Source of the DNA: Ylistrum balloti
Taxonomy: Eukaryota
Assembly: GCF_031769215.1 (NCBI RefSeq)
Contig: NW_026782022.1
Coordinates: forward strand, 62,001 to 126,000
Length of the DNA: 64,000 nucleotides
Direction of reading: 5' to 3'
Part shown: piece by piece, positions 17,049-25,015 of the stretch
Position numbering within the stretch: position 1 is the stretch's first letter
Layout: each line of letters starts with the position of its first letter
Notes under the pieces: generated by a model
What the model was told of the DNA's origin: nothing
What the model saw: the letters and a program-made list of their open reading frames with translations, nothing else
The model's database searches: none
Translations under genes and position numbers: made by a program

Positions 17049-20000
17049 ATGTCTCTGGAAGACCCATTTTTCGTTGTCAGAGAGTAAGTCACTTGACAAA
17101 CAAATACACGACAGTCAGAGATTTTGGTCAACACTGTTCGTTGGTGGAAGATTATAGAAATACAAATCAAGCTAAAGGCTTACTATATACAGAACTATAC
17201 CAACGTTTAAAGATAATTTAATTCTCAAACCAATACAAATTTTATAAGTATATGTGTAATCTCAACTGTACACGGTCGCTGGCCCGGCGTTTCTTTTTAA
17301 TACAGAAACACATTTTACGTTGTGTTTATTTACACACTTTCCAAGAAATTTAGAATTTCTTCTTCCAGGATGGTCATTTACTGTGATTAGTTGTCATTAC
17401 TGTTATGATCAATTACTTCTTTGATACTGATATCTACTTGAAAAGAAGGCTGAAGAAACATTGATATATATTGATCTCTTTCCGGTCCTGGCAGAGGACA
17501 CTATAGTTTAAACTACAGTCAGTCTGTCGGATTTCCTTGTGATTACAACTCTTACGTTATGTTCCACAGTGATAAAGCTTTTCAGAAATGACATCATTTG
17601 TATTGTTGATTCTATATAAATCATTATTTCTTTTATATATATATATATATTATCAATGCCTCCGCTACATGCTCCCCCTCCAGGAAATAACTTGTTCTTG
17701 AGTTTCCAGGGGTTACAGCGATGCTGGTGGGACATGGCTAAGTACTGTTCCCGGGTCCCTACCTGGGCGCCAGTGTAACAGAGGACATTATTTATTTCAA
17801 TGCCTCTGCTAGGAATCGAACCCGTGACCCCTGGCTACTAGTCTGATACTCAACCATTTGAGCTAAAGAGAAGTTCTCTCTAGTCTAGTGGTATATTGCG
17901 ACTAGTATTTTACCAGGGTTACATATATATATACATAAATTGTGTTGGTTTTGTTTTTAGTTTTAGCCCCTTTTTCAACTTAAAATTTTTTTATCAGATA
18001 TTTAGCAAAAAGACATTGGATTAAACTAGTTTTGTTGTGTTTGTATATAATTTTTCATAAAAAAATAATAGCAAAACATTTTAAAATGTAAAAATTAAAT
18101 ACAATGTATGCTAACTTTTGTGAAAATGTTGCTAATGAATTTTCATGTTTTAACAAATCCATTCTTTTTATTAATTTTTAAAGATGGTCAATGCTGAAGA
18201 AAATGTCCATTTTCTGATAGAATGGGACAAAGAACAAATATAATTGTGCATCCCTAAGCCTGTATCCCAGATTGAATCTATATATCACTGATTTCCAAAA
18301 ACTAAATAACTAATGAAGAAAATCCTTATCCGATCAAACTTGTCAGACTGACTAGATGATAAATATAAATTAGGCATCTATATTTGGCCCCCAATCCCAA
18401 TAATGCTTTGTGCATATCACATGTAATGATGTAAATAGCATGCCGAAAGAAAAATACATGTGAAAGAAGACTACCACAGAATCTGCCACAGAGAAGAGAA
18501 AACTAGGTCAATTTTACATGATGTAATCTACAATATTTCATAAATGATTGTTACCTGATTATGACAGAAGTATGCTTAAAGAGTGTCCAGATTCAATGTC
18601 ACACATGATGATTTAAGAGTTGTCTGTCAGAGCTCAGCACCTCTTGCACATGGTAATGCTGAATTGTATTTATAAATGTAATAATACCTAGATCCATAAC
18701 CCTGATATAATAAATTCCCAGCCTGTCACCTCATTCAGAATACTTGCATATTAAGGGATTCTGTAGGATCAATCATTTTATGTATTTTCAAATGAAATAT
18801 TTTCAAATTTACAGTGAAGTACAAAAGGCTGTTCAATCATCTCGTAATTTGTATGACCGATGGTGTGAACTCCTGGAAAATCCAAAGTCAGTATCTAAGG
18901 AAGAATATGATTGGACAACCAATGAGTTGAGAAATAGCTTGCGGAGTATAGAATGGGACTTGGAGGATTTGGAGGAGACCGTAGATATCCTTTATAAAAC
19001 AAGATATATGTATAATTTTGTAAAGGTATATACTTCAGCAGTCATATTATTTTAGCCCTATCCACACTGAAATATTGTCCTAATATCAGTTTCTGTATGC
19101 TGTTCAAATTTCAGTCTCTGTATATTGTTTACATAACAACTATTATCGATGCACAATGAAGTTTTATAATCCATACAGGTTCATTGAAAAAAAAAGGGCC
19201 TGATGTGTTTCTTTTTCACTGCATGTCAAAGATCACTGAACAAATTTGGGGAAGAGGCATGCAGAATGTGATGGTGTTTTTCTACATGCATGTGTTATTA
19301 AAATTGAAAAATTTAAGGATTTTATAAAAGACCCACAATTATAAAAATAATATCTTTCAATACAAATCATATATTTCTACGTATCGAATAATGAACACTA
19401 CTGCATCCTTAGAGCTCATTCATCTGACGAGGATTCTTGATTGGCCCTTGGGTCAGAAGTGTAGGATCGAGTTCAGAAGGTGAATTAGGGAAATCAAAGT
19501 CACCTTTAAGGAATGTCAAAATATAAAAGGATTCAATACAATATTTTCATTATTTCTACTAGATTTTTCTCCTCTATATTCTTCTACGATACATTAGATT
19601 TATTACATTTCAGAATTTAACATACCTGGTACATGTATATTCTCCTTTCATATTTAATTGACATCAAATGAGATTTTATGGATGTTAATGTTTGTAATAT
19701 TGTTATTATAGTAATTGTAGTCTTACATCAAATGACTTTGTAGTACATTCATACATGGTTTTCTTTAACATTAAAACGTATTGTGGAAAAAAATCCAAAG
19801 AAGTTTAGAATTGATACCTCAGAGTTGCTTGACAGAAGAGCTTTCATTGATCGAACCAAGTCAGCTGTCCTGGTAAGTGATTGTTTTTCTGATCATTTTA
19901 TATTTTTTTTTTATTCTTAAGACCCGTGTGTAGTCTTTAGTAATAGATATGTTTCATCTTATGAATATTTCAAATGAAGCATATTCAGTATATCTTTGCT

Positions 20001-23000
20001 AGTCATCTAATTATAGACTAGGTTTCAGCAAGGACTTTAAGTTACCCAACTCTTATGTATGCACACATATATACATTATAAATCATTTGTTAACAAAATC
20101 AGATCATTGTTACCTTCCAATACCCCCTCTAACACAGAAATAAAGGAAAGAGTCCAATAGTATTTAAGACACAGGAATAGGAATGCATTACAGTTACTCC
20201 AACTAGCAATGATAAAATGTATAGTCTTCATCATGTCTTTAAAATCAATTGTGAATGAGTGTCTTTAAAGGTCTTGGTTTAAATTTGAATGAGACAAATC
20301 AAATTTCATGAAGATTTTTGTTTCTCTCCAGCAAATGAAATCTCACTTAACCAGTCCAAAAGCTAAGCCAAAGGAAGATATGGGACCTCGGCAGGTAATA
20401 TTGAATGTCTGAAGATGTGAAATCAAAATTTGGGATGTGCAGAATGGATGTAGTTTGAAAGGTTCCATTATGAAATGTTATCACATTGTCCTATATAGAT
20501 CAAAAATGAAAAAAAGTAGGCTAGGCAAATGTCATCAGTATCTAAAATGATTACTTATAGTATACAATTATGATCCTTTGTTGCAATCAAATCACTGGAG
20601 GTCAAGGTTGATATTTGTGATCTGAGCTCCACAAATCCTCATATCAATTGAAACAAAGTTCCATAACTGTCTTATTATATTTAGGATTCAAAACAAGAGC
20701 ACAGGTTGCTCAAAGTAGGATTCCATGCAATTTAAGTTGCATCTAATTCCATAATATTTACAATTTCATGAATTTTGCATCTTTGATGAAATATTGTATT
20801 GCACTCTCGCACAACTTGCCAGACATGTCAGACACTCTTACTGACTGAAATTACATGTCACAGAACAATTGCGTAAATGTGTGATGTGATGTTTTATTGC
20901 TGTTGCAGAGTGCAGGTTGATGTGAAATGAAATAATATGTGATAGCTTAACCTTTACTAAGACATTTTCATGATGGAAAATTATTACAATTTTGTAAAAT
21001 ATTGAACAATAAGGCTGTACTTTATGGTTTTACATTTATTGTTAACAATAATTCCTGTCACTGTGATTTATACTACTCAGGCATTAATATCTAATGGAGC
21101 TGGTAAACAATATGATCGTTACACCAAACTGGACCAAGATATGGAGCGTGCAAACCAGAGGTTTATAGATGACACTACCCAACAGCAACAGGTAGTATAC
21201 TATTAAACAAGTCTGGCAATAGGCAATTCACACCAATCCAGAAATAAGATAATACAATATCACACACTCCCAGAGACAAGGTAGCACAATATCACACACT
21301 CCCAGAGACAAGGTAGCACAATATCACACACTCCCAGAGACAAGGTAACACAATATCACACACTCCCAGATACAAGGTAGCACAATATCACACACTCCCA
21401 GAGACAAGGTAGCACAATATCACACACTCCCAGAGACAAGGTAGCACAATATCACACACTCCCAGAGACAAGGTAGCACAATATCACACACCCAAACATT
21501 GGGTAGCACAATAGCACACAACAAGAAATTAGGTTGCACAATATCACACACCCAAACATAGGGTAGCACAATAGCACACACCCAGAAATATAGTAGCATG
21601 ATAGCACTAAATCAGTCAAAAGTAGCACATACAAACATAGAAATAAGATATATCATATGAACGTAGAAACAATGAAGCACAATATACACTACAGATAAAA
21701 AATGGCAGCAAAATATCAATTAAATCAATAAATCAGAAATTTAAATCAAATGCCATTTTTCATAATTACTTAAATGAAACTTTGGTGCTTGTTGTACTTC
21801 TGACAGTAAGAGATGAAGTAGTTCACTTTGAAGCATAATTATGATACGTTATTGGAATCTTAAACTGTTTCTGTTTTAGCTCCTGATAGAATCTCAGGAC
21901 GACCAGTTAGAGAAGATAGGGACCAGTGTTGGGGTTCTGAAAAACATGAGTCACCAAATAGGCAACGAACTAGAGGAACAGAATATGTAAGTGTATTACA
22001 TTCAAATGAAAAAAAAGTATGCTAGAGAATTTTGTTTCTCCCTCTGTGTTTGCATGGGTTCTCAAGGTATTCCCTCAAAATGTAGACCCTAATAAATTGA
22101 AGAGATTCACAGTTGCTGTCACATATAGTTAGTTAATATTCAGATGTTTTTATGACTAAAGGATTAGTTTAAAGGTTTTGATTTCTTTCTAGTATAAGTT
22201 TTGGAAATTTCTGTTTCACACAGAAAATATGTGTATGAAATATATTTTTCTAAAAATACCTGAAAAATGTTATAAAATTAAATGCATAAATTATTTCAGG
22301 ATTGATTTGAATGGATTTTACATTATTATAGATACATAGAATTTAATTAAACATGTACTTTATATAAGGCATAAGCTAAGCTTTTATGTGTTGAAGAGGC
22401 CCCTTTATGGTACCAAACTGTAAACATGCTGAAGTAAATACTTTAATTTGATTTTTATTAACATGACAAAAGATTTATGATCTTCTTTAAACCACTGCTT
22501 CCATTCAAAATTATTACTTACTGTACTTCTTTTCTAGTAAATCAGAAGAAACGTTACAAACTCTGATGATATTTTCTTACCGTGTGACAAACATATTTTC
22601 CAAAGCCAAAGTTTATGCTAGTCTCAAGCATATAATATGTTCAATATTTTTCCACAGCATGCTGGATGACTTTGGCCACCAGATGGATACAACAGAATCC
22701 AAGATGGATGCAACTATGAAAAAGATGGCAAAAGTTTTACACATGTCTAATGGTAGGTACAACTCATCCCATGTCTAGTGGTAGGTACAACTCATCCCAT
22801 GTCTAGTGGTAGGTACAACTCATCACATGTCTAATGGTAGGTACAACTCATCACATGTCTAGTGGTCAGTACAACTTATCACATGTCTAGTGGTAGGTAC
22901 AACTCATCACATGTCTAGTGATCAGTACATCTTCTCAAATGTCTAGTGGTAGGTACAACTCATCACATGTCTAGTGGTAGGTACAACTCATCATATGTCT

Positions 23001-25015
23001 AATGGTAGGTACAACTCATCACATGTCTAATGGTAGGTACAACTCATCACATGTCTAGTGGTAGGCACAGCTCATCATATGTCTAATGGTAGGTACAACT
23101 CATCACATGTCTAATGATAGGTACAACTCATCACATGTCTAATGGTAGGTACAACTCATCACATGTCTAATGGTAGGTACAACTCATCACATGTCTAGTG
23201 GTAGGTACAACTCAGCACATGTCTAATGGTAGGTACAACTCATCACATGTCTAATGGTAGGTACAACTCATCACATGTCTAATGGTAGGTACAACTCATC
23301 ACATGTAATGGTAGGTACAACTCATCACATGTCTAATGGTAGGTACAACTCATCACATGCCTAATGACAGGTACAACTTATCACATGTCTAATGGTAGGT
23401 ACAGCTCATCACATGTCTAGTGGTAGGTACAACTTATCACATGTCTAGTGGTAGGTACAACTTATCACATGTCTAATGGTAGGTACAACTTATCACATGT
23501 CTAGTGGTAGGTACAACTCATCACATGTCTAATGGTAGGTACAACTCATCACATGTAATGGTAGGTACAACTCATCACATGTCTAATGGTAGGTACAACT
23601 CAGCACATGTCTAATGGTAGGTACAACTCATCACATGTCTAATGGTAGGTACAACTCATCACATGTCTAATGGTAGGTACAACTTATCACATGTCTAGTG
23701 GTAGGTACAACTTATCACATGTCTAGTGGTAGGTACAACTTATCACATGTCTAATGGTAGGTACAGCTCATCACATGTCTAGTGGTAGGTACAACTTATC
23801 ACATGTCTAGTGGTAGGTACAACTCATCACATGTCTAATGATTGGTACAACTCATCACATGTAATGGTAGGTACAACTCATCACATGTAATGGTAGGTAC
23901 AACTTATCACATGTCTAGTGGTAGGTACAACTCATCACATGTCTAGTGGTAGGTACAACTCATCACATGTGTAATGGTAGGTACAACTCATCACATGTGT
24001 AATGGTAGGTACAACTTATCACATACCTAGTAGTAGTTACAACTTATCACAAATCTAATGATGAAACATAAAAAAAGGTGAAGAGCCAACACCATACTTT
24101 TAGTAAAGTTTGAGTAGGTTCCGTGGTCCATTGCTTGGATACCTCCAGGTATGCAGGACGATTGAAGAGTAGAAGGAACTAAAGGGTTAGAGGCAATCGC
24201 AACAAGCTCAGGATTCTAAAATATTATTTATTACTGTTTGTCTACCGGTTTCGCCCAAAACATATGGGCTTCTTCAGAAATATTTCAGAACCCTGGGCTT
24301 GTTGCCATTACCTCTTACCCTTAAGTCTAATGGTAGTTACAATGTATCACATATCTAATGGTAGTTACAATGTATCACATATCTAATTGTAGTTACAATA
24401 GATCACATGTCTAATGGTAGTTACAATGTATCACATGTCTAATGGTAGTTACAATATATCACATGTCTATTGGTAAGTACAACTTACAATGTGTCTGATA
24501 GCAGGTACACCTCATCACATAATTAACAGTTGATATAACTTACCTGTGTCATTGAATATGGAAAGTTGGAAAGCATTTTGTGCTATTTAAGGCTCAATAT
24601 TTACCTTGGATATCCTTGTGTCTTGACCATCCACCTTACAAGATATTTGTTGTATTGCAATATAACAGGAACATATTGTTTTATTAATTTATTTTAAATT
24701 TATAATCTAAAAGTATGCAGCATAGATCTCAACAAGTATCGGAGGACATACTGGAGGGTCCCATTAGATAATATTCAATTTCAACATCTTATGCTTTCAT
24801 ATGTTGATTAACGATGTACATGGAATCACATTTACCTTGGTTCAAATGTTATTTATACCTAAAGACCATTTCATGTAGTACTTGGCACTGTAAGTGTTGT
24901 GACATTAAGTGTGTTGTTTTTTTCTTCTTCTTCTTCAGATAAACGACAGTGGTGTGCAATATTTGTTCTTCTAGGTGTATTACTTATTGTTGTAATACTT
25001 TTCATGGTGTTGTGA
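17049..25015 (+). CDS. STX6: Syntaxin-6 (Qc-SNARE), 250 aa, complete
   Basis: [43 protein letters not shown], a SNARE motif ([33 protein letters not shown]), and a C-terminal TM ([22 protein letters not shown]). Exons: 17049-17083, 18815-18984, 19778-19872, 20332-20394, 21081-21191, 21880-21986, 22658-22752, 24939-25015 (753 nt). The frame is open only if intron 2 is spliced as AT-AC. Confidence 0.96.
17653..17923 (-). mobile_element. tRNA-derived non-autonomous element with split direct repeats, embedded in (TA)n
   Basis: Minus-strand A-box AGCTCAAATGGTTGAG (17849-17864) and B-box GGTTCGATTCC (17812-17822). Repeat pairs at 17653-17667/17797-17811 and 17706-17717/17913-17923. (TA)n on both flanks. 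Confidence 0.65.
18985..19777 (+). other. U12-type (minor spliceosome) AT-AC intron, STX6 intron 2
   Basis: The 5' end is ATATCCTTT (18985), the branch point TTCTTTAAC is at 19761-19769, and the intron ends in AC at 19776-19777. Removing it joins ETV-G-IVEKNP in frame. Confidence 0.92.
21255..21640 (+). repeat. 30-bp minisatellite (CACACTCCCAGAGACAAGGTAGCACAATAT) in STX6 intron 5, decaying rightward
   Basis: About 8 near-perfect copies, then divergent copies. Confidence 0.93.
22739..24060 (+). repeat. 28-bp minisatellite (~47 copies), unit CACATGTCTAATG|GTAGGTACAACTCAT, spanning the STX6 exon 7 donor; degenerate copies continue at 24326-24520
   Basis: Direct reading. The first copy overlaps the last 13 nt of exon 7 plus the donor. 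Confidence 0.97.
24061..24325 (-). mobile_element. ~265-bp insertion interrupting the 28-bp minisatellite; carries the hammerhead motif (retrozyme or Penelope-like fragment)
   Basis: Non-repeat sequence bounded on both sides by TCTAATG of the satellite unit. A TSD cannot be distinguished from the unit sequence. Confidence 0.6.
24182..24322 (-). ncRNA. Type I hammerhead ribozyme-like motif closed by a long stem (possibly degenerate)
   Basis: The minus strand reads CUGAAGA-A-GCCCA-uauguuu-UGGGC-GAAA-CCGG-UA (24277 to 24243). It is flanked by 44-nt inverted arms at 24182-24225 and 24279-24322. Confidence 0.75.

What the first reader, a model, noticed from the sequence alone, without database searches (positions are those of the whole stretch)
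24182..24322. Hammerhead ribozyme core at the tip of a 44-bp hairpin, antisense inside a STX6 intron
Seen in sequence: the minus strand reads ...gaaauauuu-CUGAAGA-A-GCCCA(uauguuu)UGGGC-GAAA-CCGG-UA-gacaaac... This gives both conserved catalytic boxes (CUGANGA and GAAA), a perfect 5-bp stem II, a minimal stem III whose sequence ACCGGU is palindromic, and a GUA cleavage triplet. The core is enclosed by two 44-nt arms that pair at 38/44 positions by Watson-Crick rules. Three of the six differences are G-U pairs on this strand versus one on the plus strand, which favours selection at RNA level in this orientation. Established knowledge: minimal type I hammerheads with palindromic stem III work as dimers and occur in Penelope-like elements and in non-autonomous retrozymes, which give rise to small circular RNAs in metazoans including mussels. 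Inference: this is a copy of a ribozyme-bearing retroelement family in this genome. Caveats: there is an extra A between CUGAAGA and stem II, and the core-proximal stem I pairs poorly (U-G, U-A, then mismatches), so this copy may be inactive.
Basis: partly seen in the sequence, partly recalled or inferred. Interest (0 to 1): 0.85.

Follow-up and report, generated by a model that had tools for sequence, protein, structure and literature searches.

The report
Dead Penelope retroelement tail with hammerhead
The hairpin with a hammerhead ribozyme motif is real, but it is an old, very short copy of a Penelope-like jumping gene, a kind long known to scatter such minimal ribozymes through animal genomes, so it is ordinary and probably inactive.

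Summary
On the minus strand, two 48-nt arms (41/48 Watson-Crick pairs) enclose an intact hammerhead core with a GUA cut site at 24243/24242. It lies antisense in the last intron of an STX6-like gene.

It is a 264-bp insertion (24061-24324) with an 8-bp target-site duplication, inside a 28-bp minisatellite. Its 214-nt body (24277->24064) aligns along its whole length with the 3' end of an autonomous Penelope-like element (PLE) elsewhere in this genome. That element encodes RT and GIY-YIG, has 567-bp pseudo-LTRs and carries the same ribozyme core in each pseudo-LTR. The 5' arm is the inverted, truncated partial copy that PLE insertions typically carry. 19 of 46 family copies I examined have one, so the arm is not an evolved stem I.

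The "extra A" after CUGAAGA and the palindromic CCGG loop are published hallmarks of PLE minimal hammerheads, which act weakly and only as dimers.

This copy is a lone motif with a decayed helix I and 15% arm divergence, so it is most likely a dead relic. Rfam's hammerhead models miss it, I found no covariation within the family, and no usable RNA data exist.

Earlier notes of this scan describe the same kind of relic on other pieces of this genome. Interest is low.

The parts
24061..24324 (-). Whole insertion (264 bp): a short PLE-derived unit plus its inverted partial copy
   Evidence: Tandem Repeats Finder shows the 28-bp minisatellite ending at 24060 and resuming at 24325. The boundaries agree with the ends of homology to other copies.
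24279..24324 (-). 5' arm: an inverted, truncated partial duplicate of the unit's own region 24225-24178
   Evidence: Inverted repeat I1, 85% complementary. The same architecture is seen in 19 of 46 family copies and upstream of the autonomous element in L053.
24240..24280 (-). Minimal type I hammerhead motif. Helix I 5' strand 24280-24278 (UUU, degenerate), CUGAAGA 24277-24271, bulged A 24270, helix II and loop 2 24269-24253, GAAA 24252-24249, palindromic loop CCGG 24248-24245, U-A 24244-24243, cut site 24243/24242, helix I 3' strand GAC 24242-24240
   Evidence: Sequence. Scores 64.8 bits against family model R1. No Rfam hammerhead hit.
24178..24225 (-). 3' arm: the part of the unit's body that the 5' arm copies
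   Evidence: It aligns with all family copies.
24061..24177 (-). Remaining 3' tail of the unit, down to the element's 3' terminus. It includes the best-conserved 40-nt block, 24164-24125, which holds a small AUACC/GGUAU hairpin.
   Evidence: Homology to the PLE 3' end at L053 2994->2782. Block conservation is 0-6 mismatches in 20 copies.
24053..24060 (.). Target-site duplication, copy 1 (plus strand ATCTAATG)
   Evidence: The duplication breaks the 28-bp register of the minisatellite, so it is not a product of the periodicity.
24325..24332 (.). Target-site duplication, copy 2 (plus strand GTCTAATG)
22740..24482 (.). 28-bp minisatellite into which the element inserted (22740-24060, 47.5 copies; 24325-24482, 5.6 copies)
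22656..22752 (+). STX6-like exon upstream of the intron (approximate bounds; it encodes ..[31 protein letters not shown])
   Evidence: Frame translation. The N-terminal domain of the same gene is at 18798-19016.
24938..25015 (+). Last STX6-like exon (approximate start; it encodes DKRQW followed by the membrane anchor and the stop)
   Evidence: Frame translation.

Best explanation
Window 24061-24324 (minus orientation) is a fossil insertion of a Penelope-like retroelement (PLE) family. It consists of the last ~214 nt of the element and an inverted partial duplicate of 46-48 nt joined to its 5' end. The 214 nt begin at the family's minimal type I hammerhead motif and run to the 3' terminus. The hammerhead is there by descent: in autonomous relatives it lies in each pseudo-LTR, 213 nt before the element's end. 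In such elements the motif is thought to process multimeric transcripts. It does so only as a dimer formed through the palindromic loop ACCGGU, and weakly or with protein help. The hairpin is a by-product of integration. [quoted passage not shown] That places the ribozyme in the loop. Shown here: homology to the PLE tail, the pseudo-LTR/RT/GIY-YIG context of the same core, the recurrent inverted arm, the target-site duplication and the minisatellite target. Inferred: target-primed reverse transcription, the snap-back origin of the arm and dimer-dependent cleavage. This particular copy is alone, old (arms 15% diverged) and has lost the GUC/GAC helix I of its relatives. It most likely does nothing, and being antisense it cannot cut the STX6 pre-mRNA.
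For: The strict core pattern gives 21 hits against 0 in the reversed control. Among them are same-strand pairs 3.9 kb apart. Between such a pair in L053 lies a 931-aa ORF with Pfam RVT_1 and GIY-YIG and a CX3CxxC linker. It is flanked by 567-bp direct repeats at 98.4% identity, an upstream inverted partial copy at 100% identity, and a 10-bp target-site duplication. Window 24277->24065 aligns to the PLE tail L053 2994->2782 at 73.5% over 219 columns, E 1e-26. There are at least 150 family copies. Of the 46 examined, 19 have an abutting inverted arm, 14 start at the hammerhead edge next to unrelated DNA, and 13 continue into pseudo-LTR sequence. The insertion is delimited to the base by the minisatellite and carries an 8-bp duplication. 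The bulged nucleotide between A9 and G10.1, the G10.1-C11.1 pair, the palindromic loop 3 and a short helix I are the published signature of PLE min-HHRs. Opposite-strand motif pairs are also described there (PMC4209133). Inverted 5'-truncated copies and a microsatellite insertion bias are described for PLEs (PMC8557442). RNAcofold predicts the 6-bp intermolecular ACCGGU helix with helix II kept.
Against: Rfam's hammerhead models give no hit on the window copy or on the young PLE copy, even at E<=10. There are no compensatory changes in 28 aligned copies. The hammerhead block is not better conserved than the rest of the unit: mean pairwise identity 0.77 against 0.71, 0.82 and 0.67. There is no RNA evidence: all runs found are contigs of uncertain RNA status and show no ends. 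The sharp 5' boundary of many copies lies at the 5' edge of the hammerhead, not at its cleavage site, and neither ribozyme cutting nor random 5' truncation explains this.
Confidence: 0.88

Rival explanations
1. An active retrozyme-type unit. The minus strand is transcribed, the hammerhead cuts (perhaps helped by the long hairpin acting as an extended helix I, or by pairing in trans with transcripts of other copies), and small linear or circular RNAs result.
For: The catalytic core, helix II, GUA triplet and dimerisation loop are intact. The D. virilis PLE hammerhead has only a 2-bp helix I (PMC4209133). The hairpin-with-ribozyme architecture recurs in 19 of 46 copies. Mussels and other invertebrates express HHR circRNAs (PMC7229834).
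Against: There is a single unit and a single motif in 64 kb, so no cis dimer and no second cut site for a circle. Single min-HHRs showed no detectable cleavage in vitro (PMC4209133). Proximal helix I is reduced to G-U plus A-U. The position of the arm's inner end varies from 0 to 72 nt among copies, so no fixed geometry is maintained. There is no RNA evidence.
Confidence: 0.04
2. A MITE or foldback DNA transposon whose terminal inverted repeats form the hairpin, with the hammerhead boxes being a chance match.
For: A long inverted repeat is flanked by a short direct duplication. Rfam sees only generic long-hairpin similarity, on both strands.
Against: The inverted repeat is not terminal: 117 nt of conserved tail follow the 3' arm inside the duplication. 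Many copies lack the 5' arm altogether. The unit is homologous to the 3' end of an RT/GIY-YIG element. The core pattern is 21 against 0 in the control.
Confidence: 0.03
3. A domesticated hairpin RNA: the 48-bp stem in the STX6 intron, on either strand, serves as a small-RNA precursor or a double-stranded RNA signal.
For: The fold is very stable (z = -11). There are weak matches to long-hairpin miRNA families (best 32.9 bits).
Against: These scores are far below the gathering thresholds (100 bits) and equal on both strands. The arms have decayed to 85% complementarity with mismatches spread along the stem. The architecture is a generic by-product seen in many copies.
Confidence: 0.04

Closest known systems
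Minimal hammerhead ribozymes (min-HHRs) in the pseudo-LTRs of metazoan Penelope-like elements (Cervera & de la Pena 2014, PMC4209133)
   Same: The conserved core; an unpaired nucleotide between A9 and G10.1; the G10.1-C11.1 pair; helix III reduced to A15.1-U16.1 with a palindromic loop for dimerisation; a short, poorly defined helix I; thousands of mostly solitary copies from truncated PLEs; and motif pairs on opposite strands 100-700 bp apart.
   Different: Helix II is 4-5 bp here, against 6-8 bp in the Schistosoma and Drosophila families described. In this family the inverted partner is often so truncated that it lacks its own ribozyme, which leaves one motif in a hairpin loop.
Complex PLE insertions: partial tandem (pseudo-LTR) plus an inverted 5'-truncated copy at the 5' end, with a microsatellite target bias (Craig et al. 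2021, PMC8557442; Neptune/Nematis clades with the CX2-5CxxC linker)
   Same: The autonomous relative in L053 has direct 567-bp pseudo-LTRs, an upstream inverted partial copy, a target-site duplication and the CX3CxxC linker. The window copy has the inverted partial copy and sits in a minisatellite.
   Different: The window copy is only the last ~214 nt. The family shows a strikingly sharp preferred 5' end at the edge of the hammerhead (33 of 46 copies). I did not find this described in the papers I read.
Poseidon PLE of Anolis (PAc): internal initiation of reverse transcription and a protein-assisted hammerhead (Frangieh et al. 2024, PMC11167929)
   Same: The hammerhead lies a short distance upstream of the site that becomes the element's 3' end, so even extremely 5'-truncated copies keep it. 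The ribozyme is inactive alone.
   Different: The distance from the cut site to the 3' end is about 175 nt here, against about 90 nt in PAc. Nothing was tested biochemically here.
Metazoan non-LTR retrozymes giving small circRNAs (Cervera & de la Pena 2020, PMC7229834; Li et al. 2026 preprint, 10.64898/2026.07.22.740005)
   Same: Short non-coding units with a type I hammerhead, related to PLE pseudo-LTRs and probably mobilised by PLE enzymes.
   Different: Retrozymes are head-to-tail tandem repeats with canonical hammerheads, bounded by cleavage sites. This is a single unit with a minimal motif, and its boundary is not at the cleavage site.

Membership tests
Hammerhead ribozyme, PLE-type minimal type I (min-HHR) | Catalytic boxes C3-U4-G5-A6-N7-G8-A9 and G12-A13-A14 | tested here: met
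   CUGAAGA at 24277-24271 and GAA(A) at 24252-24249. Nearly invariant in 28 copies.
Hammerhead ribozyme, PLE-type minimal type I (min-HHR) | Helix II closed by G10.1-C11.1, at least 4 bp | tested here: met
   GCCCA/UGGGC, 5 bp, in the window. The four helix II pairs form in 91% of cells across copies.
Hammerhead ribozyme, PLE-type minimal type I (min-HHR) | Unpaired nucleotide between A9 and G10.1 | tested here: met
   A at 24270, present in 28/28 aligned copies. Listed as a conserved min-HHR trait in PMC4209133.
Hammerhead ribozyme, PLE-type minimal type I (min-HHR) | A15.1-U16.1 with palindromic 15.2-16.2 / loop 3 that allows a dimeric helix III | tested here: met
   ACCGGU. RNAcofold predicts the 6-bp intermolecular helix with helix II retained.
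Hammerhead ribozyme, PLE-type minimal type I (min-HHR) | NUH cleavage triplet | tested here: met
   GUA at 24245-24243.
Hammerhead ribozyme, PLE-type minimal type I (min-HHR) | Helix I of about 4-5 bp flanking the core | tested here: not met
   The window copy has UUU opposite GAC, which gives G-U and A-U and then mismatches. Most relatives have GUC/GAC, 3-4 bp.
Hammerhead ribozyme, PLE-type minimal type I (min-HHR) | Match to a curated hammerhead covariance model (Rfam RF00163 and related families) | tested here: not met
   No hit at E<=10 on 201 nt of the window or 91 nt of the young PLE copy. RF00163 does find another, bulge-less min-HHR family in this genome.
Hammerhead ribozyme, PLE-type minimal type I (min-HHR) | Covariation supporting the helices | tested here: inconclusive
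   0 compensatory pairs in 28 copies, where variation is one-sided decay. Between the two hammerhead families of this genome, helix I and pair 10.2-11.2 differ on both sides, but their homology is not established.
Hammerhead ribozyme, PLE-type minimal type I (min-HHR) | Self-cleavage at the predicted site | not testable with these tools
   Only assembled contigs of uncertain RNA status were available, and these show no molecule ends.
Penelope-like element (EN+, Neptune/Nematis-type) insertion | [quoted passage not shown] | tested here: met
   L053 3845-6640(-): RVT_1 E 1.7e-7 and GIY-YIG E 4.6e-5, both over Pfam cut-offs. CGKNCRIC linker. There is no ORF in the window copy itself.
Penelope-like element (EN+, Neptune/Nematis-type) insertion | Pseudo-LTRs carrying the hammerhead | tested here: met
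   567-bp direct repeats at 98.4% identity, with the core 353 nt in and 213 nt before the end.
Penelope-like element (EN+, Neptune/Nematis-type) insertion | Sequence homology of the window unit to the element's 3' end | tested here: met
   73.5% over 219 columns, E 1e-26, co-linear from the hammerhead to the terminus.
Penelope-like element (EN+, Neptune/Nematis-type) insertion | Inverted 5'-truncated copy adjoining the 5' end; target-site duplication; repeat-rich target | tested here: met
   Features as described in PMC8557442.
Metazoan non-LTR retrozyme | Head-to-tail tandem units, each with a type I hammerhead, yielding circRNA | tested here: not met
   One unit and one motif in the 64-kb window. 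circRNA could not be tested.
MITE / foldback DNA transposon | Inverted repeats at both termini of the inserted unit | tested here: not met
   The 3' arm ends 117 nt before the 3' boundary of the insertion.

The most novel reading that the evidence does not exclude
The 5' edge of the hammerhead is a defined 5' end of this family's RNA template, either a promoter start inside the pseudo-LTR or an unknown processing site. Short 'ribozyme plus tail' RNAs would then be copied in full. The cDNA would often fold back on itself, repeatedly creating hairpins with the ribozyme in the loop. In that case the ribozyme-at-the-5'-end transcript, not the tandem precursor, would be the unit that PLE enzymes mobilise here, and the hairpin might even supply a surrogate helix I.
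Probability: 0.15. Interest if true: 0.45.

Novelty: new member of a known kind. Interest (0 to 1): 0.18.

Why it matters
It matters little in itself. It adds one more bivalve family to the well-documented spread of minimal hammerheads carried by Penelope-like elements, and it shows that the eye-catching hairpin is an integration scar rather than a ribozyme adaptation.

Two practical points follow. First, curated hammerhead models (Rfam) miss this bulge-containing variant entirely, even though at least 150 copies exist in this genome. Genome annotations will therefore under-count such motifs. Second, the family's unusually sharp 5' boundary at the ribozyme edge could bear on how PLE templates are made, which is still an open question for this retroelement class.

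Tried and rejected
1. Rfam scans at E<=10 on 9 kb and 201 nt, and at gathering thresholds on the whole window, gave no hammerhead hit. They gave only sub-threshold long-hairpin miRNA matches on both strands, which I rejected as generic.

2. The same scan on the young PLE copy was also blank, so the miss is a limitation of the model, not a sign of decay.

3. The covariation test on 28 copies found no compensatory pairs.

4. I tried to fetch 60 more, lower-scoring copies to look for diverged subfamilies, tandem pairs (for example two same-strand hits 118 nt apart on C370) and a wider census of 5' boundaries. The census therefore rests on 46 distinct copies in 93 held loci.

5. The search for sequencing runs found no run on record as RNA and only assembled contigs. 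Laying four runs on the autonomous element showed presence, head-to-head joints and copy boundaries, but no molecule ends. This says nothing either way about expression or cleavage.

6. Testing whether the hammerhead block is better conserved than the rest of the unit showed that it is not. The perfect core identity between the window lineage and the young PLE is biased, because I found the young PLE by searching for that exact core.

7. The histone-H3-like N-terminus of the PLE's second ORF is not conserved in the only homologue found.

8. I considered and dropped reading the G-U asymmetry as a sign of strand-specific selection (3 against 1).
Full report
**Observation**

- A 5' arm is followed by CUGAAGA (24277-24271) and an extra A (24270).
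- A 5-bp helix II (GCCCA/UGGGC) has a 7-nt loop.
- GAAA (24252-24249), CCGG and U-A follow, giving a GUA triplet with the predicted cut between 24243 and 24242.
- GAC and, a little further on, the 3' arm come next.

The repeat finder gives arms 24279-24326 and 24178-24225, 48 nt and 85% complementary. The 152-nt RNA folds at -74.2 kcal/mol, z = -11 against shuffles. Of the seven non-Watson-Crick positions, three are G-U on the minus-strand RNA and one on the plus-strand RNA. The count is right, but a 3:1 split among four transition-type mismatches carries no weight.

**Gene context**

The gene context is also right.
- A STX6_10_61_N domain is encoded at 18798-19016 on the plus strand.
- SNARE-type exon segments lie at 21880-21987 and about 22656-22752.
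- The last exon, with the membrane anchor, lies at about 24938-25012.

The feature therefore lies antisense in the last intron.

**Curated models**

Rfam gives no hammerhead hit at E<=10 on 9 kb or on a 201-nt slice, and nothing at gathering thresholds in the whole window. The only matches are far-sub-threshold long-hairpin miRNA families, equally on both strands. The same blank result holds for a young, perfect copy of the motif elsewhere. The miss therefore reflects the model, not decay.

**The family**

The region has at least 55 BLAST matches in its own genome, which is 648.5 Mb in 1372 contigs. Aligning 30 of them shows a unit of about 214 nt that begins at (G)GUC-CUGAAGA and runs to window 24064. 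There are at least four subfamilies, which differ mainly just downstream of the ribozyme. A strict core pattern hits 21 times, against 0 for the reversed control. A covariance model built from 28 copies finds 150 copies, which is the scoring cap.

**Link to an autonomous element**

Thirteen or more copies share an identical core with a 7-nt loop 2, and some form same-strand pairs 3.9 kb apart. In L053 such a pair flanks a 931-aa ORF with Pfam RVT_1 and GIY-YIG and a CX3CxxC linker. This is the architecture of an endonuclease-positive Penelope-like element of the Neptune/Nematis type, as summarised in PMC8557442.

Further features of L053:
- The pair lies in 567-bp direct repeats (pseudo-LTRs, 98.4% identical).
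- The core starts 353 nt into each repeat and 213 nt before the element's 3' end.
- An inverted partial copy (207 bp, 100% identical) with its own reverse-complement ribozyme adjoins the upstream pseudo-LTR.
- The whole is flanked by a 10-bp target-site duplication.

Window 24277->24065 aligns co-linearly with the tail of this element (L053 2994->2782) at 73.5% identity over 219 columns, E 1e-26.

**What the window feature is**

Tandem Repeats Finder shows a 28-bp minisatellite running 22740-24060 and resuming at 24325. The insertion is thus exactly 24061-24324 (264 bp). It is flanked by (A/G)TCTAATG on both sides, a duplication that breaks the 28-bp register and is therefore a true target-site duplication.

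The insertion consists of the 46-48-nt inverted partial copy, the hammerhead, and the tail to the element's 3' terminus. [quoted passage not shown]

Among 46 distinct family copies in the loci I hold:
- 19 have such an abutting inverted arm, whose inner end maps 0-72 nt into the unit.
- 14 begin at the ribozyme edge next to unrelated DNA.
- 13 continue into pseudo-LTR sequence.

The variable geometry argues against selection for a particular stem I extension.

**Is it a hammerhead?**

By descent and by design, yes. The catalytic boxes, the G10.1-C11.1 pair, the GUA triplet, the unpaired base between A9 and G10.1, and the one-pair helix III with a palindromic loop are the four "unsearched-for" traits. 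Cervera and de la Pena list these as marks of genuine PLE min-HHRs (PMC4209133).

RNAcofold predicts the 6-bp intermolecular ACCGGU helix with helix II preserved, whereas the monomer prefers an inactive fold.

The same genome also holds a second min-HHR family, which Rfam does detect. It has no bulge, a CAGCUG loop 3 and ACAUCA/UGAUGU as helix I, and it often occurs as 45-nt tandem arrays. The same architecture is thus kept with different helices.

The evidence has clear limits:
- No compensatory change occurs within the family.
- The ribozyme block is not better conserved than the rest of the unit: 0.77 against 0.71, 0.82 and 0.67 mean pairwise identity.

**Activity of this copy**

Published single min-HHRs showed no detectable cleavage, dimers only a little (PMC4209133), and the Anolis PLE hammerhead needed its protein (PMC11167929). 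The window holds one motif only. Its helix I has decayed from GUC/GAC to UUU/GAC, and its arms have diverged by 15%. It is most likely inert, and being antisense it cannot cut the STX6 pre-mRNA.

RNA data could not settle this. The run search returned only assembled contigs, none on record as RNA. Laying four of them on the autonomous element showed presence, head-to-head joints, and copies ending at the same ribozyme edge in other organisms' runs, but no molecule ends.

**Open point**

Thirty-three of 46 copies have their 5' boundary within a few bases of the hammerhead's 5' edge, often preceded by an extra G. The ribozyme's cut site lies 38 nt further downstream. Neither ribozyme cutting nor random 5' truncation explains this. 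A transcription start or a processing site at that edge, with occasional fold-back of the cDNA, would explain it.

**Comparison and verdict**

This is a new member of a known kind: a solitary, decayed PLE-tail copy with the PLE-type minimal hammerhead. It is not a tandem retrozyme (PMC7229834), not a MITE, because the inverted repeat is not terminal, and not a miRNA gene.

Earlier notes of this scan on other pieces of the same genome reached the same reading for sister copies. My tests were made independently of them. Interest is low.

Noticed in passing
G000:C874:485752-486065 (L061/L062); also C348:515462-516041, C645:1052305-1052520, C36:1273684-1274456: Tandem arrays with a 45-nt period in which every unit is a complete minimal type I hammerhead: ACAUCA-CUGACGA-GUCC..GGAC-GAAA-CAGCUG-UA-UGAUGU. 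Many units score over the Rfam RF00163 cut-off. This is a second hammerhead family, without the bulge, in the same genome.
   Followed up: partly
L053:3267-3848 (-) and L052:5713-6294 (+): The autonomous PLE has a second ORF of 192 aa with two C2H2 zinc fingers. Its ATG overlaps the stop of the RT/EN ORF (TGATG). Its N-terminus reads MARTKQTPRKQ, identical to the first six residues of the histone H3 tail. The only homologue found (P0001, Ylistrum balloti, 50% identity) keeps the fingers but not this N-terminus, so the resemblance may be a lineage-specific accident.
   Followed up: partly
46 family copies in L001-L093, e.g. L003:1495, L012:1594, L020:1495, L030:1495: The family has a sharp preferred 5' end at the 5' edge of the hammerhead (33 of 46 copies), often preceded by an extra G that is absent from the pseudo-LTR context. 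The boundary is 38 nt upstream of the ribozyme's cut site, so cleavage does not explain it.
   Followed up: partly
window 24125-24164 (-); L053 about 6805-6766 (-): The best-conserved block of the unit is not the ribozyme but a 40-nt stretch in the tail (0-6 mismatches in 20 copies). It contains a small hairpin, AUACC-NNNN-GGUAU, whose loop differs between lineages (UGGA against GGGU). It is a candidate recognition element for the PLE reverse transcriptase.
   Followed up: partly
window 22740-24060 and 24325-24482: A 28-bp minisatellite (47.5 + 5.6 copies) starts at the donor end of the STX6-like exon that ends at about 22752. Its unit contains the exon's last codons plus GTAGGT, so the array repeats the exon/intron junction. 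The PLE copy landed inside it.
   Followed up: partly
window 21253-21558 (+): A 32-bp tandem array in the preceding intron stays open in one reading frame and gives weak sub-threshold matches to the mir-3689 hairpin model on the minus strand (26 bits against a cut-off of 58).
   Followed up: no
L053:2997 and 6710 (loose ends in runs X2, X5, X19): Contigs from public runs labelled as two other organisms (B and C) hold relatives of this PLE at 90-99% identity. Their copies break off at the same hammerhead edge and the same 3' terminus, so the family and its boundary habit are shared beyond this genome.
   Followed up: no
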